A stretch of 64,000 bases of DNA from assembly GCA_964106645.2 (NCBI GenBank), contig OZ067042.1; one strand, 5' to 3'. This document shows, in pieces, positions 2,801 to 40,542 of the stretch. How positions within the stretch are numbered: position 1 is the first letter of the stretch; each line of letters begins with the position of its first letter. This DNA is from Podarcis pityusensis. Its lineage: Eukaryota. Under the pieces are notes generated by a model, which saw only the letters and a list, made by a program, of their open reading frames with translations, was not told the DNA's origin and made no database searches. The position numbers and the translations under genes were made by a program.

Positions 2801-3389
2801 CTGTCACTCACAACACAAGAGACATGTCATTTTCTTTCTCAAAAGAAGCTGACGAGTAATATATAGCAGCCTATTGTGGAGATACTCTGGGGCCAAACAG
2901 GATGGTGTTGGTTTTTTTTTTAAATAACCAGCTTCCTAGCCTTGCACTCCCAGATATTTCCCTATTAAAGCTCAAAACACACACATAAAAGTGGTCAGTG
3001 CCAGTAGGCCAAACGCAAGAAAGTTAGGTGTTCTTTTTTTTTTTTACTTTTTCAAATTATTTTTATTAATTTCCCAAATTATTACAAATCAAACCAAATT
3101 CATTTAATTTAATACAAACATATGACCACCATCATTTCCTCACATAGCTGCATCATTATTCAGCTGCATCTTATTTAGAGTCCAGTTGACATCCTTCACT
3201 TGCTGTTAAACCATTCTTCCAGCTGACCTTTTTTTTCATCTTACAAGCAGCACCTCTGTTACATCTTGTAAATAAACAATCTATTTCACGGTGTGGTCCT
3301 TCAAATACATTGTTGTTGGCAGACATGGCTTGTGCGGCACAGTGGGATGCAGTGAGCTCCCCAGAACCCACTGGGGAATGTTGCCAGGT

Positions 3390-3626
3390 TTTTTGCCTCA
3401 TAAATCTTGGTTTTCCCCTGCCTGAACCTCCTCACTGCCCATGGAGGGAAGCGAGGAGCAAGCACCATTGACTCCTGATGTGACCGGAAACCTCAAAAAT
3501 TAAACATCACGCTTAACTTTTGAGGTTTCCAGTCACATCGCGAGCCAATGGTGCTTGCTCCTTGCTACCCTCCATGGGCAGCGAGGCGGTTCAGGCAGGG
3601 GAAAACCAAGATTTATGAGGCAAAAA
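3390..3626. repeat. Long inverted repeat (foldback): two 114-bp arms with a 9-nt loop
   Basis: Arm 3390-3503 is the reverse complement of 3513-3626, with 9 mismatches counted by hand. Confidence 0.92.
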
Positions 3627-4677
3627 TCGTAAGCCTATTGGTATTCATGCTTTAAAATGCATTTCATTCTGTGTTGGATTGTGGCTGAAGTGTGGCTGAC
3701 CTAAGAGAAGATGGCCTCTTTGACATCCACCATTTGCTTGTGGACCTAAATAAGAGGTAGGCAAACATTTATCCAGAGGGCCACATTCATTCATTCATGA
3801 AAAACTTTCTGAGGGCCACATGCAAGTGGTAGGTGGGGCCGGAGACAAGAGTGAGCAGAGCAATAAAAGTCACTCTTCTTTAAAGTTTTCTACATTCCAG
3901 GCATGCAGAAGTCAGATTTCTATCCATCCTTCATCATGGAATCAAGTGGTCTTTATCACAGTTTGAGGACACTTTTCACCCAAGCAAAAGCCCTCCAGAA
4001 AGGCATGGACCAGGACTAGTGAGGGTGTGTGACCTAGGGTCAGAGAAAGAGAGAACCAAAGAGCCACATTCGGCCATTGAGGTTCTTCACTCCTGATCTG
4101 CAGAACAGTATTAACAGGAACAAAGACTATTTTCACCAAGTACATTTCAAAAGAAATCTGCATTGGCTCTTTACTCTCAACACATTTTGAAGTATGCACC
4201 ATTTCACGAGAAAGTTTTTGCACCGTGACCTTAATTGACTATAATGGAACTTATTCCTGGTAAGAGAGCCCAAGTTTGCAACTTAAGAGTTTTGTTGACA
4301 GTGAATATCAAGTCCCACCAATCTAAGAATGCTTGCAAACAGTTTGGCTAATAAAAATGTTTATTCTAACTTCCATAATTTGCAAGTGTGAGAAATTAAA
4401 TCTAGGAAGATATTAAAATTCATCTGGCTAGCTTATGACTTGATCTGATAATCCACTGCTCTGGAACAAGAGCTAATGGGATCAATAAAAGGGACCGGTG
4501 GATGTGTTGCACGAGGACGCCTTCATGGCACATGGGGATCTGAAGCCTTGACCAAGTCAAGGTAAATGGGCAAGATACACAGGAGGCAGATTCTCAGTGC
4601 AGCCTTGTGGTTTTTGTGCATCTTTGTAATAAAGAATAATCTTCCCCAGTGGAGAAGCCGTAAGAAAATTTCTTTAC

Positions 4678-4807
4678 CTCCCAGTCCTCTATTGAACTTT
4701 GCCACTGAGCAATTTTGTCTATGTTTTCCAAACGCCTCTTCCTCTCGTTGATGAGTCGTGCTACGTTCTTCATGGCATTCAAAGCGGCTTCGACGTCCTT
4801 AAAATCC
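4678..4807 (-). CDS. ARHGEF4: ARHGEF4 DH-end exon: (R)[43 protein letters not shown]
   Basis: Acceptor cctag|G GAT; donor GAG|gtaaag. 130 nt; completes the split Arg codon. Confidence 0.95.
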
Positions 4808-5573
4808 CTAGGTTTTAAATGGATTCCATTAGAGATGTCAACACAAAGCAGCCACAATGCAAAAGGAATGGCCCTCTCCCCCAAAGCATAAGAAACTAGC
4901 AAGCAAATTGTGGGGTTAAAGAAAAAAGAACAGCCAGGAGCTCTACCCCTGACTTGAAGTACATCTGATGTAATTGCTCGAGCTTTAATAGTTTCCCTAT
5001 CTGCGGTGCGGAGATAATATAGAAGAGTTACAACTTGTGACTTGGTTTGCTGATGCCTGCGAAACACTTCAGCAGTATAAATAACTGTGAAGCTAGCAAC
5101 TGCTGTGATTGCACTCCCGTGCTTCTCTGTACAGGACCTGGAGTGGTGTCCACTTGGAATTCTCCCCCCTCACATTATACGCCACACAACATACATCGCT
5201 GCCCTTTCTTGTACTTTACTTGCTGTTCAGGGCACCAGCAGTAGGAATTACAGGGACATCCTCAGTATCTGGAGGAAGCAGCTTCCATAACCAGCATCAG
5301 AACTGCTTAAGCTTTGCTGCATCAGCAAAACCGCCATCCCCTGGATGGGCATTAGCTGCAGAAACTTTGACCGTTTGCACGTTCCAGAGAAAAAGCCTAT
5401 TTGATCACTGGAAGGTCACAAAAACAAAATGGGACCTAGACACAACCATAAAGAAAGGCCTGCTCATGTTACTACCAACTAATTTTTACAAGTATCAAAA
5501 GAAGGAACAAACTAAGACGGCTGCATCTGAGACAGGATATGTATCCTCCCTGCCCCTTTGTAATCCTCCGTAC

Positions 5574-8448: not shown

Positions 8449-9058
8449 CTGTTTCAAAACAGGAATATTCCCATCATATAGAAGCAAAGGCAGGACAACA
8501 ACTTATTGCTTAGGACAAAATATGGGAGAAGAACATTCTGGAAGGCGGAGCTTACTGCAAGTGTTCCAACTAGTTTGTGACTACTAGACTTGGAATATGA
8601 ATCTGGCCGTAAATTCTGTTCCATCTCCCAAGGCTACTTACAGAACAACTATTTAAGATACAGGTTCAATAATAATAAAACATAAAAATACAATTCCCAC
8701 AAAAAATCCACAACCAAGCACCCAAAAGCGAATTCAGCAGCAAACAGTGGGTTTTCCTGGGGAAAGCAGTGGGACAAAAGAAAAACCTCTTGGACCTGTG
8801 CCTAGAAAGTATAGGACAAGCAGAAGAAAACATGGGACAAATGGAAGGGTGGAGGAGCTCAAATTTAAGGTAGCAAAAAATTCCCATCTGTCCACATACC
8901 CAGTGGCTGCTACTGATCACTAAATCATATTAAAAATGTGTCAACTGCTAGAAGTTACTGAAGCTACAGGAAAAGTGCTTCTCTTCTCAAAATGCCCCCT
9001 TTCTTGAAAGAGTTTGCTGTTAATGAATGAATTTTTTAAAACAGTGAATAGTTCTTAC

Positions 9059-9238
9059 CCGTACGAAGCTGGCTGGGAACCAGCCCTCGCTGTCCATTAT
9101 TCTGCCCCACCACCATTCTTTGTTAGTTGCATCCATTACTTCAATGACATCACCAGCCTTGAAGCCCAGCTCTTGGTCATCCATGGTGACATGATCCCAG
9201 AGTGCTTCGGCGTAGACCACACCACCATCACTGATGAG
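9059..9238 (-). CDS. ARHGEF4: ARHGEF4 SH3-domain exon: [60 protein letters not shown]
   Basis: Acceptor ttccag|CTC; donor CGG|gtaaga. 180 nt. SH3 signatures ALWD, WWWG and GWFPASFV. Confidence 0.96.
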
Positions 9239-23960: not shown

Positions 23961-26900
23961 ATAATAATCTCAATAATTACCTCCATCCATATGAGATGTC
24001 CAGGCTCTGAGGTCAAGTGTAGAGGTCCTGTTCTGTCCCCTCACCTCCCATTCGCTAACATAAAGGGGGCAGCTGGGTTTTTTATGTGTCCTGGAAAAAG
24101 AAGCTTGCCTGTCTCCTTAGTGAGCAACGAAGGCTTTTCTTTCCCAGCAGGCTTTTAGGAATGTGGTTTTCTGAATTTGCTTTTCACCTGCCATGGATCT
24201 TAGAAATGTATGCTTTTTTATCAGGCGGATACATTGCTAATGTTTTATTGTCTTAGATGTATTTCTTTGCCTAATTATTTAGAAAGGCAAGATACACCTT
24301 TTGGAAATGAAAGATAAATAGAACAACCTCCTAAAAAGGATGGGATACTGGCAAAAAATATCAGAAGAGGGAGACAAATTTGATACCTTATCTGAGTAGC
24401 AAGCAACACTTTATACAAATATAAATATATGAACCTCACTAGGGAGTCATTACAGTCAGATATGATTTTGGAGTGCCCGTTAGAGAAACAAGGAATGTTA
24501 CTTACTTTCCTTTCGATGTCATAATGTACAATGTTATTACTGTTTATCACATTGCTGTCACAGAATTACTAATAAGATCTATTCCTACCCGCTTTTCAAG
24601 GCTAGGCTCTAAGTTTTAGTGGAACACACACACTTTCTTAAGGCAAGGAAAGGTGATCATTATCAATTCCTCCCGCCTCAAACTCTAGATCTTAAAGGTG
24701 TGCAAGTCCAGCAATTTATTATCTAAAAGGCACACAAGACAAGTGAGTGTATGCACAGAAATTGTGTGGGAGCACCACACATGCTACTTTGAATTCCCTC
24801 ATGGAAGAAAGGCAGGATATAAATGCATAAGCAGCTCACTTCTGACAATGTTCATGCTGCTACATACCTCTGTTGAAGTGTAAAGTCCCAGTAACTAGTA
24901 ATTTGGTTATTGCCTACTGAGGGTTAATTGACACACATTTCCATCCATGTTTATTTGAATACAGTTTGGCTTTATTTTGAGGAACAGTTATAACAGTTCT
25001 TTTTATAAGAAGCCAGAATTTATTCGATTTTTAAATGTCAAGCACCAACATTGGAAATTTACAATATGCCATGAATAAATGCATGAGGAATCTTATTGAC
25101 AAAACAGCCTCAGAACTCTTTTTCTTATAGCGCTCCCAGGATACAGTGTATAGAAAGCATTGGGTATTTGTCAGGGCTGATTTGCATGGTCAAAAATTGG
25201 GCTCTCCCCAGCACCAATGTTTCTCATTGTACGCTCGCCAGCCATCTGGGTTTGTAATGAATTCTTAGAGGCGCATCCTGATCCAGTTATGAAGGCCTGT
25301 GTATGTAAGCAGAGGCTTCTTTTTACATACTACCTGCTGGATCAGGAACAATGGAGATTAACTGGATTCACATCTGCATTCTACATTTGTGGACAACTAA
25401 TGCCAGAACTAGTGGCACAACTAGAATTGGTTTGGGGATGAATGACACACATTCTATCAAGGCAAAGAGCTTGATTATAAAATAAATAAATATGAAAATA
25501 AATAAATATGAATTGGCCCTCAGTATTTTATTTCTGGCTATGGCAAAACAAAAGTTCTGTTTGTTTCTTTATTAACACTGCAGACTGCTGCAGCATACAA
25601 CATTTATTTATATTTAAAATGTATACACTGCCTTTCCAAATATGTTGCTCAAAGCAGTAAGCAAAGAAGAATGGAAATTGTAGCAGAAGCTGGAGCTAAG
25701 AAAACCAAGCTGAGGCCTTTCATTTTTATTTTTTTTCATCTTGAAAGCAAACTCCCCCCACCCCGCGCAACTACTCTCTAAAGTTATACCATGTTCATAT
25801 CGGAAATTAGGCTTTTAGCCAGACAAGTAAAACAGATTTTTGGTTGGGTTTATTTTTCCCAACTTTACATTAAACTAAGAAAACAATACATTTAAGAAAT
25901 GCTACATGCTCTTGTGTTGTTTGGTTTGCCTTAACCAAGGCAATGATGAATAAAGTCTATGCAAAAACCATTCTGAGAACTAACTAGCTGTCAGGCTTGC
26001 ATCTCTGAGTGTATCCCAGGCTTGCTTCCATGTGCCAAAAATCACAAAGTATTTTCAAAATGAGCTTTCTTTAAAAAAGAAGGTGTCTAGCACAACAACA
26101 GAGTGACTCATGTAACTAGTAGGAATGGAGAACACTGCACAAAACACGACACACACATAACTTAGAAATAATGGCTCTTGATAATGGATTCAGTTCTTTT
26201 AGGGTGGAATTAGCATTAAACTCCAAGGAGAAGAGAGCAGTTTCATTATCAAATATTGGACCACGTGAGATGAATACACCTGAAAGTTCTTGCTTTGCAA
26301 CTTCAATGCCAGTAAGGGGTTTGTTGCGTTTCTGGAGGGCTGGATTTCTACTCAAGGCTTGGAAAGCAAGCCACACTTGTTAATTTTTGTGACTTGTTAA
26401 TGTCACAGGATTTATTTGAACTTCAGTGTTTCTTGAAGAATCAATTGCCTTTGACACTACCAGCCTGACTGCTTTTCCCTTGCCTCCCCTCACTCCCATT
26501 TTCAATCCATCAGTGTCTGAATTTCCAGATGGAACAAGACTGGTAAATAAAAATGTATCATTTCCAAGTTGATTATCAAGTTGGCTTTTCTCCATTTTAA
26601 GAGGCCCGGATCAGCTCTCCCACAACACCTCGATATTTCAGCTAGAAACAGAAGGGACAAAGGCAGTTTCTTGTCCAAAGATCCCACCAACATATTTTTT
26701 TTTACATGTTTCTCTACACATAAGCACTCTAAAGTCATTAAGAAAATGGGATAAAAGCCAGTGAAGACATACATTCCACAGGGCGGTCGCTGAACATAAA
26801 CATAGATTCCTGATGTACTCTAATGATCCACCATTAATCAATTACAGCTAATTGGGCATTACTCACAACCCAGTGCACATATTCTTGAAGCCCCGATGGT

Positions 26901-27099
26901 CTCAATTAGAGAGCAATATTTGCTCTAATGGATTGGGCTTTTCTCACAGCAGCTGCAGACATGTAGCCGTTTTCTTGTATAATAGTTCATCAAATAAGTG
27001 CCACTTAACAAGCCAATGGAGTGCATAGATAGAGTCTGCTGAGCACTTCCAAGTCCATTCAGCTAAGAGGCGGAGTGTGTCTGTATGCAGCATCATTGT

Positions 27100-27760
27100 G
27101 ATTATAGCCAGAGGTGGCCGGCAGCGACTCAGTTAACCAAGCTGGCCGCATTACTTCTTCCCTTTCCAAGATGTGATGCTGCTCTGGCTGGCAAGGCACA
27201 GGCAACGGGAACAGGGAGAGCCAGGGATACAGTGCGCCGATGAATAATCACAGGAGACATGCTCAGACACATGGCTACGACAGAAGACAAGGCGAACCTG
27301 AATCAGACAATGACGAGCTGACCTGCTGGTCTGAGGCCAGTCCTGGAAGCCCCCAGCCACTCTTTGCCACGCAACAACAATCCTGCTTCTCAGTAAACTG
27401 CCAGGAGAAACATGAGCACAACATTAATGATGATGAGAAAGAGCAGAATGACAAAGACCACCACGCGCTGCGTTTCCGGGTTCATGTTGCACCGGAGGAA
27501 TGTGTGAAGCGCACTCCATTTGTGCCTGCTCTGGTTCGACCCCTTCGCCATGTCTGGGATTGGCCTCAGCCCCTCGACAAACAGCGTCTTAGCAGGTTAG
27601 CAGCAGCGCTGTTTCCGGAAGAAAGCGTGAGGGGAGGCAGGGGAGGGGTCTACAAACAATAGAGGCATTTCTGCAGCTGTCAGGAGGCAAAACCTGATCA
27701 ATTCGGTACAGCCATTATTATGATCGGCTTCCGAGCATAATACGCGCACATGCAAGTACA
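27100..27760 (-). promoter_or_regulatory. CpG-enriched putative internal promoter / first-exon region around the SMIM39-like ORF
   Basis: CpG density is visibly higher than in the flanks and no repeat is recognisable. Upstream of the ATG lie a palindromic ETS-like TTCCGGAA (~27613-27620) and a G-rich box GGGGAGGCAGGGGAGGGG (~27631-27648). Confidence 0.5.
27390..27551 (-). CDS. SMIM39: Small integral membrane protein, SMIM39-like, 53 aa: MAKGSNQSRHKWSALHTFLRCNMNPETQRVVVFVILLFLIIINVVLMFLLAVY
   Basis: Hand translation: ATG in strong Kozak context (gacATGG) to TGA, with a 24-residue hydrophobic C-terminal helix. The LRCN...QRVVV...INVVL.FLLA pattern and the position in this ARHGEF4 intron match my recollection of human SMIM39. 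Confidence 0.8.
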   Translation of the reverse strand: MAKGSNQSRHKWSALHTFLRCNMNPETQRVVVFVILLFLIIINVVLMFLLAVY

Positions 27761-30141
27761 TCCTCTTCCCCCAAGCAATCCTCCTTATCTGGTTTTTGTT
27801 TTTTGTTTTATCTCAGCAAAGCACCAGCTTCCCACTTCATCTTCAGCAAAGTAACTGCCTCCATAAGCATTAGCTGAGTGAAGCTCCTATAGGAAGAGGG
27901 CTGCGTGTGCTGGAGCCCAGAGATCTCAGCAGCGATACTGGCTTTCTAAAGAGCTAGTCAGCTATTTGCTAAGCGCTGTAGCTAGGATACATGCAAGCCC
28001 TAGCAACGGGGGAGAGCGGGGAGGGCAGCAAGGAAAATGTGGGTCTTTCAAGGAGGGTTACAGAAGTGGAGGCAAAAAAAACCAAAGGCAGCTGTGTTGG
28101 TCCATAAGCGGGGGAGAGGAACCCTCCAAAATGCAGAGCTCTGAAGTATCTTTATTAAGATCAGCCAAAATGTTGCCAAATAGGGTGCAAGGCTTTGAGT
28201 TCTCCAGAATTCTTTATCAATCTAGGCACTGCCCAAGCAGGGGTTGGGGAAGAGGAGGGGGAGGCATGGGTACAAAAATCTGGTTAGCTGTTGAAGCCTG
28301 AAGGTTTGCATTCAGACTCAGTCTGCAGATGGAGACGTTAACTGAATTAGTCTCTACAAGATATCAGATGATATTTAGGATTGAAAGATGAAGAGGCAAT
28401 AGCCCAGTTTTGAAAACAATTTTGATGCTGTTAATCAAATGTGGCATTCATTTAAAAAATTCAGCTATGAGCTGAGTAGGCAAAAATAAATTAACAAAAT
28501 TAATAAGATTAATGCAGGTGCTTCTTCAGATATTGCATAACGGCAATAGCAGTAGACAGAAAAGGAAATACAAATTGCAAGTGTAGATAACCTAATTCTT
28601 CAGCAATGGAAACAAGGAAAAACCTGGCCAGCCTTGGGTAGTGAAAAAGCAAAGGCAGGCACTTGGATCCAGAAAAAAAGCCTCCATGATTGTTACAAAA
28701 TAAGAAGCAAGCTTTCCCGGGGTCCAGAACTCTTAATGAGGCTGGAAGCTATACAAAGGAGAGTTGCAGGGGAAGGGAAGAACAAAAAAGAGAGAGCAGA
28801 AATAGGCTGGTATGTAGCCAAAAGACCTTCATTTAGACCCAATTTCAAGATGGAATTTGCATATTGTCTCTTTAAATAGATACATCAGTTTCAGCAAACT
28901 ATTCTAAAACTGATTTTCAATCATCATGTAAAATATATAAGAACATCTATGTTCTGTATACTCTGAATGAGAAGATTCCTATGATCGGAAATAGGAATTG
29001 ACCTCATTCAGATCTATTATTAGTATTATTTATTTAATTTATATACTGCCCTTCATCCAAAGTTCTCAAGTGCTTTCAACATTTTTGAAATCTAGAGATT
29101 CACTATGATTTTTAGCAAATAATTCACACAGCTACTCAGAAAAATGTGGGAGGACAGATGCACTCTTCCCCCAAACACACCACACTAATAGCAGCCAGGT
29201 CATCTGAATCATATATCACAAGCATGTATGGCAGGAAGCAAAACCACAGTTTGTGCATGATTCAATTATGCAGATAACCCATTGTCTTAAGTTATGTTGT
29301 ACACTAACTTGGTAACTTCTGATTTAATGGCAGTGTATATGCTTTAAATACAGTAAATAAAAAGAATAATACTGTAATACAGAAACAGGTGGGGGAGGCA
29401 GGTGGACACCCAACACACAATGGTTCCGTAATCTACACTGAGATGTTTTTCAAATGTTAGTACTTGAGAGACCAGTTCTGTTTCTGAACTATGTGTCTGG
29501 CCTGATTGCCCTCTTCTCTCCCTTGCTAACATAATTTACTTTTTGCCCATAAATCTTTGAAAGTCCTCACCAAAGTTATCTATATTTGTGAATTGACACA
29601 AAAGAGTGGATTTGGAAGACATAGAGTCAACACAAGCATCCTGTTTGACTTGAGTTCCTGGTCAGATTGTGGGAGAGAATGCATATTCCACATTTTATTT
29701 TTAAGACTGTGTACGAAAGACTCCAAGCCACTCAGGAGACAGGCGCTGGACCATGGTCTGATTGAGGGAGATTTCCATTTGGAATTAAACAAACAAACAG
29801 ACTACCATATCTGATTTTGGGACTTAGCACAAACATGTAGGCAGGCAGGCTTAGTATGCAAACTCCCACCACTGCCCCAGCTCAGATTGTTATCTCCCTT
29901 GTGTCTAGGAAAGGCTAAATGTTATGAAAGCCAAAGTATTACCAGTTTTTCACAGAGAGATCAACATTTCAACAAAAGACTCATGCAACCATCTTAAGCT
30001 GGCAACAGTACAAGCTCAGGATGTGAAGTTTGACTTTTTGCACTGTGAAGTCATATTTGTTGAAAACTTTACAGTAGTATGGCAAACACAGAATCAACGG
30101 CACTGCCACTTTATCAGGAAAGAAAAAAGTCAACCCGTACC

Positions 30142-30402
30142 CACTGGCAGAGGGCGGGGAGGAGTGCACCGCCTCCGGCACCATCGGGGAGGGGGGTACC
30201 ATCGCGGCCACCCCCCGGACACATGCCACGCACCCCCACTGTGCAGGGCGCCATGCCCCCTCAGGTGGTGCACCACACCCTTCAGGAGCATGTCACGCCC
30301 CCGTGGGTGGAATGCCACACCCCTGGGATGCACGCCACACCCCACAGCCATGCCCCCGCCTGCTCTCTGCCCCCGGTGCCAGAGCATGCAGCTTCACCAC
30401 TG
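30142..30402. mobile_element. GC-rich hAT-like MITE with internal catgccac..cccc subrepeats
   Basis: Termini cactggc.../...caccactg with a degenerate 8-bp flanking repeat. Confidence 0.55.
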
Positions 30403-30679
30403 ACCATGCCAGTTCAACCAACATTCCTGTAAGTTCATTAAGCTGTAGCCTTTTCCCGTTATTGTTCTGCACAAAAAGAAAGCATCTATTCAGAATGCAG
30501 CTTTGCAGCAGCAGCTGCAGGTTCTTCCCCAAAACGATGTGTCTTTAATTCAACATCTAATTGAAAGAAACATGTCAAAATGCCACCTTTCTGCATGCAT
30601 TCTTTGTACATGGAACCGCGTCTGAAAGGAGCTTGTATAACACCTGTAGCCTTGTGAAACATTGCCCATAAGCCGGAAT

Positions 30680-39500: not shown

Positions 39501-40408
39501 TCTGAGTTGAACGACCTATCTGTGCACTTATAGATGCATGTAAACAAAGATCACAGCAGCACAACACTTCTGAAATTTTGTTTAACCATTCTGCTGGTTA
39601 GCCCACCTATAACATTAAGATAATAAGAAGTCTTGTGCAGAACTTCAGTATATATACTGCTTGTCCCAACAAAGCGAAACGTAAGAGCTGAAGAATCAGT
39701 TTTGAACACACCAATAAAATCACACACAACAATGGCCTTGCTAGATCAGCAGTGCATCAGGCAGAGCTCTGATTGAACAATATGGAACATACCAGCTGCT
39801 AGGTTCAGATATATTAGTAGACTGAAGAACTTTGTTGCCTACTTTTCTATTCAAAGTGATTGAAATTAATTAAAAAGTCACAGATCATACAAATTACTCT
39901 AAAATTCAATTATATGTATTAAAAATCAACCAAAATACCCAACATCAACTTAATGTTTAGGATAATAAAATAATATCTCAGAACTAACAAATGCTCACAA
40001 TAAATTGGCAATTAACCTAAAGGCCTTCCAAAATATGAAAAATTAAAAGGAAACAACCTGGTGTGCTCTAATGGTGGATTCTGGGACATAGTGATTCTGT
40101 CTTAAGCTAACTGGCCTGATTGAGCTTATTGATGCATCCTCCATCATTTTTTCTCCACCTTAAAATTTGCAAACATATTTTTAAGCATCATACATCTCCC
40201 ATATGCTCTTTCAAAGGAAGTTGCCTTTGCATGTCTGCCTAATAAAATTCATGCACATGAGGGAGTTAACAGATAAATGAACCACTAGAAAATGCATCTT
40301 CTGCAAAGAGAGTCCTGCCTGGTTAATCATAATAGTTTCACTGTTGCTGCTGTTATTTAAAAATGATAGCTCTGTCTTATTTTCCTTAGAAACCCATAGT
40401 TGCAGTAC

Positions 40409-40542
40409 CTCATTAATAGCAAGCTGTTCTCCTCCTCCACCTGGGTGGCCATAACGATGGCTAGAACTTCGGAAGTCTTCATACAAGTCTTCTTCACTTC
40501 CCACATCATCACTGGTTTTCTCCAGCGATCCATCAGCAATGA
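40409..40542 (-). CDS. ARHGEF4: ARHGEF4 exon, APC-binding region: (x)IADGSLEKTSDDVGSEEDLYEDFRSSSHRYGHPGGGGEQLAINE
   Basis: Acceptor tattttag|TC ATT; donor AAT GAG|gtactg. 134 nt, phase 1 in and phase 0 out. Contains the Asef GGEQLAINE motif. Confidence 0.93.

What the first reader, a model, noticed from the sequence alone, without database searches (positions are those of the whole stretch)
27390..27551. Hidden 53-aa membrane microprotein (SMIM39-like) nested in sense in the 31-kb ARHGEF4 intron
Seen: an ATG in strong Kozak context (gacATGG) opens MAKGSNQSRHKWSALHTFLRCNMNPETQRVVVFVILLFLIIINVVLMFLLAVY*. It ends in a 24-aa hydrophobic helix and falls below the ORF-track cutoff. Recalled knowledge: human SMIM39 lies in the equivalent ARHGEF4 intron, shares LRCN..QRVVV..INVVL.FLLA, and has essentially no known function. 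Inference: a reptile ortholog at the same position would mean amniote-wide conservation and a possible functional link to the host GEF, for example as a membrane anchor or regulator.
Basis: partly seen in the sequence, partly recalled or inferred. Interest (0 to 1): 0.8.

Follow-up and report, generated by a model that had tools for sequence, protein, structure and literature searches.

The report
SMIM39 microprotein gene inside ARHGEF4 intron
The 53-codon reading frame is a real, strongly conserved gene for a tiny membrane protein, but it is this animal's copy of SMIM39, already published as conserved across vertebrates and carried on an alternative first exon of ARHGEF4, so it is a correct but ordinary find.

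Summary
The ORF is real. It is a 53-aa ATG ORF at 27551→27390 on the MINUS strand, the same strand as the host gene. It lies 12.9 kb into a 31,170-nt intron between the Asef "…EQLAINE" exon and the SH3 exon. Of 144 ATG-ORFs of at least 53 aa in the window, only this one has a TM-grade hydrophobic segment.

It is clearly protein-coding. There are 16 relatives, down to fish. dN/dS is 0.06–0.10, and it is the only one of six frames that is open and constrained in all seven taxa compared.

It matches human SMIM39 as printed in Mudge et al. 2019: 23 of 40 residues over the C-terminal 40, counted by eye, including LRCN, QRVVV, INVVL and FLLA. That paper already calls SMIM39 vertebrate-conserved, brain-expressed, located in an alternative first exon of ARHGEF4 and co-transcribed with it. 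The inferred "amniote-wide conservation" is therefore published knowledge.

New here: one fish contig shows the exon spliced directly to the SH3 exon. A conserved candidate donor, CAG|GTCAGC, lies 67 nt after the reptile stop codon. The predicted topology is tail-anchored.

RNA reads gave no verdict. A physical link to the GEF was not tested. The scan noted this same stretch once more in this genome (s1-733808), and not on other DNA.

The parts
27390..27551 (-). SMIM39-like coding sequence: 53 codons plus a TGA stop, in a single coding exon
   Evidence: ORF listing and sequence. There are 16 homologues. dN/dS is 0.06-0.10. It is the only frame open and constrained in 7 taxa. It is the conservation peak against close relative L011, at 95-100% identity.
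27393..27464 (-). Codons 30-53: C-terminal transmembrane helix running to within about one residue of the C-terminus, with an invariant Asn43 (INVVL)
   Evidence: Hydropathy above 3.0. AlphaFold2 helix over residues 25-52 with pLDDT above 90 in the core. Invariant columns in the alignments.
27465..27551 (-). Codons 1-29: polar, basic N-terminal segment (5 K/R against 1 D/E) holding the invariant L-R-C-(N) motif and Pro25. Predicted to be cytosolic.
   Evidence: Charge count, alignment, low-confidence helix over residues 8-20.
27323..27389 (-). 67-nt non-coding tail between the stop codon and the candidate splice donor. It contains no ATG.
   Evidence: Tail lengths in relatives are 68, 63, 63 and 42 nt, which are not multiples of three apart.
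27317..27329 (-). Candidate 5' splice site CCAGCAG|GTCAGC (last exon base 27323, GT at 27322-27321). Inferred, not shown by RNA.
   Evidence: Conserved in all five sauropsid-grade sequences.
27552..27800 (-). 5' leader and presumed promoter-proximal region. The transcription start site is not determined.
   Evidence: CpG observed/expected is 0.63-0.71 at 27400-27799, against 0.1-0.3 around it. There is no ATG between 27667 and the start codon.
27929..28011 (.). Conserved upstream block about 380-460 nt 5' of the ATG. Role unknown; it could be a promoter or enhancer element.
   Evidence: 75% identity over 83 nt to six contigs that carry P0002.
40409..40519 (-). End of the upstream ARHGEF4 exon (APC-binding region, …GGGGEQLAINE), with its donor at 40408
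   Evidence: The best PDB matches are human ARHGEF4 chains.
9056..9238 (-). ARHGEF4 SH3 exon, the expected acceptor exon for the microprotein exon
   Evidence: 120 bits to human ARHGEF4 against 94 bits to ARHGEF9. Acceptor ctttctctgttccag|. Homologous to the exon joined to the microprotein exon in fish contig L027.
8254..8448 (-). Next ARHGEF4 exon (linker and start of the DH domain)
4678..4821 (-). ARHGEF4 exon encoding the end of the DH domain (…[24 protein letters not shown]), followed by gtaaag

Best explanation
This is the orthologue of SMIM39, a 53-56-residue single-pass membrane microprotein conserved across jawed vertebrates.

Shown: its whole coding sequence lies in one exon inside the 31-kb ARHGEF4 intron that precedes the SH3 exon, on the same strand. 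It evolves under strong amino-acid constraint.

Shown in a fish, published for human, mouse and zebrafish, and inferred here: the exon is an alternative 5' exon of ARHGEF4. It would be transcribed from an internal promoter and spliced from a donor about 67 nt after the stop codon to the SH3 exon. The microprotein would then be the first cistron of an ARHGEF4 transcript that lacks the APC-binding-region exons.

Inferred from sequence: the protein is tail-anchored. A basic N-terminal segment of about 29 residues, with an invariant juxtamembrane Cys, faces the cytosol. The helix ends at the C-terminus, so insertion would be post-translational through a GET/EMC-type route.

Inferred: the invariant Asn in the middle of the helix and the invariant LRCN motif suggest it works by helix-helix association with a membrane partner, as other micropeptide regulators do. 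The partner is unknown.
For: The ORF and its strand are confirmed. There are 16 homologues, including carp and Chinook salmon UniRef entries, all sharing LRC(N)…P…Q[RK]VVVF…INVVL.FLL.

dN/dS is 0.06-0.10 at dS 0.75-1.25, and differences by codon position are, for example, 6/2/20. Only the sense frame is open in all seven taxa, with pN/pS 0.11-0.17. The overlapping antisense 140-aa ORF is neutral and carries stops in fish.

[quoted passage not shown] SMIM39 is also listed as an alias of ARHGEF4.

The host exons match ARHGEF4 best. Synteny holds in fish genomic contig L009, where the small ORF lies 1.7 kb upstream of the SH3 exon on the same strand.

The splice is shown in fish contig L027. It is colinear with genomic L022 up to the point where L022 continues with GT, and then reads directly into the SH3 exon (23/23 nt identical to L009's exon start).

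The window has a conserved donor candidate and no poly-A signal within about 970 nt of the stop. Hydropathy, charge and the AlphaFold2 helix support the topology.
Against: There is no RNA evidence in this genome. Three bulk RNA runs of a sister taxon put no reads on the exon. That is uninformative, because the tissue is unknown, about 12% of each run was read, and reads resembling human conserved genes are filtered out.

The candidate donor has a rare C at +3, and sequence conservation continues about 60 nt beyond it, so the exon could end elsewhere.

No mammalian or named SMIM39 entry came back from the protein searches. The link to the name rests on a by-eye alignment with the sequence printed in the supplement.

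PDB holds no SPATA13 (Asef2) chain, so ARHGEF4 against SPATA13 is settled only by very high identity to ARHGEF4 and by my recollection of the paralogue sequences.

Tail-anchored insertion and partner binding are inferences.

The stop codon lies more than 50 nt upstream of an exon junction. By the usual rule that would make such a transcript sensitive to nonsense-mediated decay, and this is unexplained.
Confidence: 0.85

Rival explanations
1. In this lineage the microprotein is an independent gene nested in the intron. It would have its own promoter and its own 3' end, and would not be spliced to ARHGEF4 exons.
For: Conservation continues past the candidate donor. The donor is weak, with C at +3. 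There is no RNA evidence here. Contigs L018-L021 carry about 2.9 kb downstream of the ORF without any SH3 exon, although they may simply be genomic. GENCODE planned to list SMIM39 as a separate gene.
Against: The curators found no evidence of independent transcription in human, mouse or zebrafish. Fish contig L027 is spliced to the SH3 exon. There is no AATAAA or ATTAAA within about 970 nt of the stop. The donor motif is conserved in all five sauropsid-grade sequences.
Confidence: 0.12
2. The ORF acts only as a regulatory upstream ORF of a short ARHGEF4 transcript. Its translation would matter and its peptide would not.
For: It sits upstream of the ARHGEF4 coding exons on the same transcript.
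Against: A purely regulatory uORF does not need a fixed amino-acid sequence. Here 19 columns are invariant from fish to reptile, and dN/dS is 0.06-0.10. Peptide evidence is reported in human frontal cortex.
Confidence: 0.03
3. It is a chance ORF lying over a conserved non-coding element such as an enhancer or ultraconserved element.
For: ORFs of this length are common, with 144 in the window. Several small libraries hold the stretch, which could mean it is a target of sequence-capture probe sets.
Against: Substitutions concentrate at third codon positions. The frame is open in every taxon despite saturated synonymous change. The other five frames fail the same test.
Confidence: 0.01
4. One reading: the peptide physically anchors or regulates the Asef protein at a membrane.
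For: Only the co-transcription and the cytosol-facing N-terminus predicted here.
Against: The N-terminal segment has no PxxP motif that would fit the SH3 domain. No test was made. Gene neighbourhood alone is weak evidence of binding.
Confidence: 0.05

Closest known systems
Human SMIM39 (ENSG00000284479; Mudge et al. 2019, Genome Res 29:2073, Supplemental data)
   Same: One coding exon. 53 aa against 56 aa. Both start with MA. 23 of 40 C-terminal residues are identical by my by-eye count, including LRCN, P, QRVVV, INVVL and FLLA. Both lie inside ARHGEF4 on the same strand. The helix ends at the C-terminus.
   Different: The N-terminal 13-16 residues are not alignable and are three residues shorter here. 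In this genome co-transcription, brain expression and the peptide itself are unverified.
Fish SMIM39-like ORFs (UniRef A0A9J8CLH8 Cyprinus carpio, A0AAZ3QQI2 Oncorhynchus tshawytscha; contigs L009, L010, L022, L027)
   Same: 55-69% identity and the same invariant core. The position upstream of the Asef SH3 exon is the same (L009), and a splice to that exon is seen (L027).
   Different: In the four fish sequences the tail after the stop also carries an ATG (MG.Q…, 11-12 codons) in frame with the SH3 exon. There the exon encodes both the microprotein and the start of a short Asef isoform. The window has CTG at the homologous place, and the frame is not kept.
Tail-anchored micropeptide regulators of membrane proteins (phospholamban, sarcolipin, myoregulin and the other 'regulins')
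   Same: The architecture is the same: about 30-55 aa, a cytosolic N-terminus, one helix ending at the C-terminus, and a conserved Asn inside the helix. Phospholamban is among the nearest named Atlas clusters, but at a score of 0.77, which is at chance level.
   Different: There is no sequence-family membership: no Pfam hit even at E of 10 or less. The position of the Asn relative to the rest of the helix differs. No link to SERCA is known. This is a comparison of how it may work, not a claim of kinship.
Conserved upstream-ORF microproteins on bicistronic vertebrate mRNAs (for example the 50-aa CDS in the MKKS 5' UTR listed next to SMIM39 in the same supplement; MIEF1-MP and ASDURF from my own knowledge)
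   Same: A conserved small CDS sits upstream of a larger CDS on one transcript.
   Different: Here the small CDS sits on an alternative first exon driven by an internal promoter, so only one class of ARHGEF4 transcripts carries it.

Membership tests
SMIM39 | Sequence similarity to human SMIM39 over the conserved core | tested here: met
   The human sequence is printed in the Mudge 2019 supplement. A by-eye ungapped alignment of lizard residues 14-53 to human residues 17-56 gives 23 of 40 identical, including LRCN, QRVVV, INVVL and FLLA.
SMIM39 | Small single-exon CDS of about 53-56 codons under purifying selection | tested here: met
   dN/dS is 0.06-0.10, and it is the only one of six frames that is open and constrained.
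SMIM39 | Located inside ARHGEF4, on the same strand | tested here: met
   The flanking exons on the minus strand match human ARHGEF4 best, and the intron runs 40408-9239. ARHGEF4 could not be tested against SPATA13 in PDB, because no SPATA13 chain appeared.
SMIM39 | Carried on an alternative first exon that is spliced to downstream ARHGEF4 exons | tested here: inconclusive
   In the window there is only a conserved candidate donor, and the RNA reads gave no coverage. The feature is met in a fish, where the L027 junction reaches the SH3 exon. Whether it is the first exon was not shown anywhere here.
SMIM39 | Brain/CNS expression and detectable peptide | not testable with these tools
   Reported for human. 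No tissue-labelled RNA or proteome of this species was available.
Tail-anchored membrane proteins | A single transmembrane helix at the extreme C-terminus with a very short lumenal tail, and no N-terminal signal peptide | tested here: met
   Hydropathy exceeds 3.0 for residues 29-53. The N-terminal 29 residues are polar with net charge +4. AlphaFold2 gives a helix over residues 25-52.
Tail-anchored membrane proteins | Post-translational insertion (GET/TRC40 or EMC) with the N-terminus in the cytosol | not testable with these tools
   Inference from topology rules only.
Phospholamban/sarcolipin ('regulin') family | Sequence-family membership (Pfam PF04272 or related) | tested here: not met
   No Pfam family at E of 10 or less. 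The Atlas score to the phospholamban cluster is 0.77, within the range that shuffled sequences reach.
Phospholamban/sarcolipin ('regulin') family | Binding to and regulation of SERCA | not testable with these tools

The most novel reading that the evidence does not exclude
The exon may be an ancient two-cistron unit. In fish, the same 5' exon encodes SMIM39 and, in its tail, the MG… start of a short Asef isoform that lacks the APC-binding region. In sauropsids, and by the curators' description in human, that second start has decayed while the microprotein is kept. If both products are made from one mRNA, the tail-anchored peptide and the APC-independent short GEF would be produced in the same cells at a fixed ratio. 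The peptide could then recruit or gate that GEF at a membrane, or its translation could set how much short Asef is made by re-initiation.
Probability: 0.1. Interest if true: 0.55.

Novelty: new member of a known kind. Interest (0 to 1): 0.25.

Why it matters
It adds little beyond annotation. The gene, its place in ARHGEF4 and its vertebrate-wide conservation were published in 2019.

The reptile copy is probably missing from protein sets, because the searches returned no named or NCBI-sourced reptile entry. It adds a data point showing which residues never change: LRC, Pro25, Q-VVVF and the intramembrane Asn in INVVL.

SMIM39 still has no known function. The four papers I could find that mention it give none. 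The invariant residues, the tail-anchored topology and the splice to the SH3 exon therefore give concrete handles for an experiment.

Tried and rejected
1. Pfam scan of the peptide: nothing at E of 10 or less.

2. ESM Atlas look-alike search: the best score was 0.83 to unnamed clusters. Phospholamban scored 0.77, which is chance level and is not used as evidence.

3. Rfam on 25000-30000: no family.

4. RNA evidence. The run search listed no holder on record as RNA. Laying three bulk RNA-seq runs of the sister taxon and one small library on 25000-30500 gave no reads on the exon, no joints and no loose ends there. I treat this as no verdict. The only RNA signal was a short repeat at 29017-29065.

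5. Word-index protein search, first alone and then with a profile. Neither returned a mammalian or named SMIM39, so the name could not be confirmed through that database.

6. The 140-aa antisense ORF at 27240-27662(+) was considered as the real gene and rejected.

7. An ATG inside the CDS (in the Asn-Val codons) opens a frame that runs through the tail to the donor. I rejected it as coincidence, because relatives use AAC for that Asn and their tail lengths differ by non-multiples of three.

8. A second donor candidate near 27157 scored below threshold and is not shared.

Not done:
- Complex prediction, because I make no binding claim and neighbourhood alone does not justify it.
- Any joined (spliced) model. 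Exons were searched one by one by reference, and frames were reasoned from each exon separately.
- Sending the human SMIM39 sequence to any tool.

Full report
**1. Observation**

The ATG is at 27551-27549 and the TGA ends at 27390, giving 53 codons. The plus strand of the same span translates to something unrelated. The start context is cagacATGG.

Length alone means nothing here. The window holds 144 ATG-ORFs of at least 53 aa in six frames. This is the only one with a 19-residue Kyte-Doolittle window of 2.5 or more, and its maximum is 3.43.

**2. Is it a gene?**

A word-index search found 8 relatives, and a profile search found 16. Identities run from 96% down to 55%. The relatives include UniRef entries from common carp and Chinook salmon.

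Across 13 sequences, 19 columns are invariant: M1, L19, R20, C21, P25, Q28, V30-V32, F33, I35, L39, N43, V44-L46 and F48-L50.

Nei-Gojobori estimates between the window and five sauropsid-grade contigs give dN/dS of 0.06-0.10 at dS of 0.75-1.25. Differences by codon position are, for example, 6/2/20.

As a control I ran all six frames. Only the ORF's own frame is free of stops in all seven taxa and has pN/pS of 0.11-0.17. The 140-aa antisense ORF (27240-27662, plus strand) gives 0.7-1.3 and is interrupted in fish.

Against the closest relative (L011, 82% identical over 1.1 kb), the ORF is the identity peak at 95-100%, compared with about 70-88% in the flanks. No Rfam family matches. The ORF is therefore a protein-coding gene.

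**3. The host gene**

Three exon-like pieces on the minus strand were searched one by one against PDB sequences.
- The SH3 exon (9238-9056) scores 120 bits to human ARHGEF4 and 94 bits to ARHGEF9.
- The next exon (8448-8254) scores 62 bits against 50 bits.
- The upstream exon ending …GGGGEQLAINE (to 40409) matches only ARHGEF4 chains, including the 25-residue APC-binding peptide.

The intron runs from 40408 to 9239, which is 31,170 nt. The small ORF starts 12.9 kb into it, and its stop is 18.2 kb before the SH3 exon.

PDB returned no SPATA13 chain. The choice of ARHGEF4 over SPATA13 therefore rests on the very high identity and on my recollection of the two human sequences.

**4. What is already known**

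The supplement of Mudge et al. 2019 (PMC6886504) lists SMIM39 with these properties:
- 56 aa, one coding exon;
- conserved in 'vertebrates', with a zebrafish locus named;
- CAGE and RNA-seq support for brain/CNS expression;
- 'cotranscribed with ARHGEF4';

The main text reports peptide support in frontal cortex. The supplement says the statistical confidence of the earlier mass-spectrometry support was not high. A review table lists SMIM39 as an alias of ARHGEF4. The other two papers that mention the gene only list it within a 2q21.1 duplication and within a selection scan. I found no functional study.

The human sequence printed in the supplement aligns without gaps to lizard residues 14-53. 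I did not type that sequence into any tool, so this count is by eye.

**5. Synteny and splicing in relatives**

Fish contig L009 is genomic. It has the small ORF at 1278-1439, the SH3 exon at 3122-3301 (92% amino-acid identity to the window's SH3 exon) and the next exon at 3564-3758, all on one strand. The position upstream of the SH3 exon is therefore conserved from fish to this animal.

Fish contig L027 goes further. It is colinear with genomic contig L022 for 1,028 nt, through the ORF and a 196-nt tail. At that point L022 continues with GTACAA…, while L027 continues with CTGATCAGTGATGGCAGCGTG…. That sequence is identical to the start of L009's SH3 exon right after its AG, and it is homologous to window 9238 onwards. 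This is a splice junction from the microprotein exon to the SH3 exon, seen in a public assembly. It agrees with the curators' statement for zebrafish.

**6. The exon in the window**

The motif CCAGCAG|GTCAGC is present in all five sauropsid-grade sequences, 67 nt after the stop in the window. It is also the only one shared by all five.

The tail has no ATG. Tail lengths in relatives (68, 63, 63 and 42 nt) do not keep a frame, so the tail is non-coding, as the curators say for human.

The SH3 exon has a good acceptor. Its first ATG in the ARHGEF4 frame is 54 nt in (accATGg), after two out-of-frame ATGs. Any short Asef made from such a transcript would lack the APC-binding region and would need re-initiation or leaky scanning; this is inference.

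CpG observed/expected rises to 0.63-0.71 over 27400-27799, against 0.1-0.3 around it. There is no poly-A signal until 26416. An 83-nt block at 28011-27929 is conserved in six contigs.

There are caveats. The donor has C at +3. Conservation continues about 60 nt past it. No RNA evidence exists for this genome: three RNA runs of a sister taxon gave no reads on the exon. The tissue is unknown, only about 12% of each run was read, and the tool drops reads that resemble conserved human genes. I read that result as no verdict.

**7. The protein**

Residues 1-29 are polar with net charge +4. Residues 30-52 or 30-53 are uniformly hydrophobic. AlphaFold2 with a 13-row alignment gives helix 25-52 with pLDDT above 90 in the core, a break at N-M-N-P and a weaker helix at residues 8-20.

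A single helix that ends at the C-terminus, with no signal peptide, defines a tail-anchored protein. By the positive-inside rule the N-terminus should face the cytosol.

Three features are invariant from fish to reptile: the Cys nine residues before the helix, the Pro at the helix start, and the Asn in the middle of the helix. From general knowledge, a juxtamembrane Cys is a common palmitoylation site, and an intramembrane Asn commonly drives helix-helix association. I therefore think the peptide most likely works by binding a membrane partner through its helix, as phospholamban-type micropeptides do. It is not a member of that family, and the partner is unknown.

**8. Verdict**

The identification as SMIM39 in the ARHGEF4 intron is right. 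The proposed conclusion of amniote-wide conservation is already published, and more broadly. The proposed physical link to the GEF is untested.

The new items here are small:
- a reptile member of the family;
- a directly observed fish splice junction;
- the candidate donor in the window;
- the list of invariant residues;
- the observation that fish tails carry an in-frame start for a short Asef that sauropsids have lost.

The organism was not identifiable with my tools because names are coded.

Noticed in passing
L027:1002-1062; L022 about 1886-1919; L009 about 1513-1548; L010 about 1520-1552: In all four fish sequences the tail after the microprotein stop holds an ATG opening 11-12 codons (MGVQHGSIRKK, MGAQHGSSITQ, MGFQDADITVEQ, MGFQDADITVQ). 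These end exactly at the donor in phase 0, in frame with the SH3 exon. A 3-nt indel between L009 and L010 keeps the frame. The fish exon therefore seems to encode both the microprotein and the start of a short Asef isoform lacking the APC-binding region.
   Followed up: partly
window 27340-27360 (minus strand); L011, L001 and L014 tails: The sauropsid tail is still recognisably homologous to the fish 'ATGGGT…CAGGA' start (TGG[A/C]TGGGGG.T.CCAGGA). The window and L001 have CTG there. L011 and L014 keep ATG, but 35 nt from the donor, which is out of frame. It looks like a decayed second start codon.
   Followed up: partly
window 27240-27662 (+): A 140-aa ATG ORF lies antisense to the microprotein gene. 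It is open in the sauropsid-grade relatives, but it evolves neutrally (pN/pS 0.7-1.3) and has stops in fish. It is a by-product of the constraint on the other strand.
   Followed up: yes
window 29017-29065: This is a short repeat core of about 40 nt. RNA reads and many unrelated contigs of the sister taxon pile up here, with loose ends on both sides and several different flanks. It is probably part of a dispersed, transcribed repeat.
   Followed up: no
L017:733-939 (P0003): This contig is identical to the P0002 group up to codon 51 and then diverges completely, losing the stop codon and giving a 68-aa product. It could be an assembly chimera, an insertion, or an alternative 3' end.
   Followed up: no
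window 27240-27700; runs X1-X14: Fourteen very small libraries (39-148 million letters, six coded organisms, 2017-2025) hold 39-80% of the sampled words of this stretch. That is far more than random shotgun at that depth would give. The exon may be a target of a sequence-capture probe set, or these may be transcriptomes. X1's contigs did not cover the exon when laid.
   Followed up: partly
window 27317-27329 (minus strand): The conserved donor motif CAGCAGGTCAGC contains AGGTCA, the classic nuclear-receptor half-site. This may be coincidence.
   Followed up: no
window 27390-27323 and relatives: The stop codon lies 42-196 nt upstream of the first exon junction, depending on the taxon, and mostly more than 50 nt. 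By the usual rule, translating the microprotein should expose the spliced transcript to nonsense-mediated decay. How the transcript escapes this, or whether it does, is unexplained.
   Followed up: no
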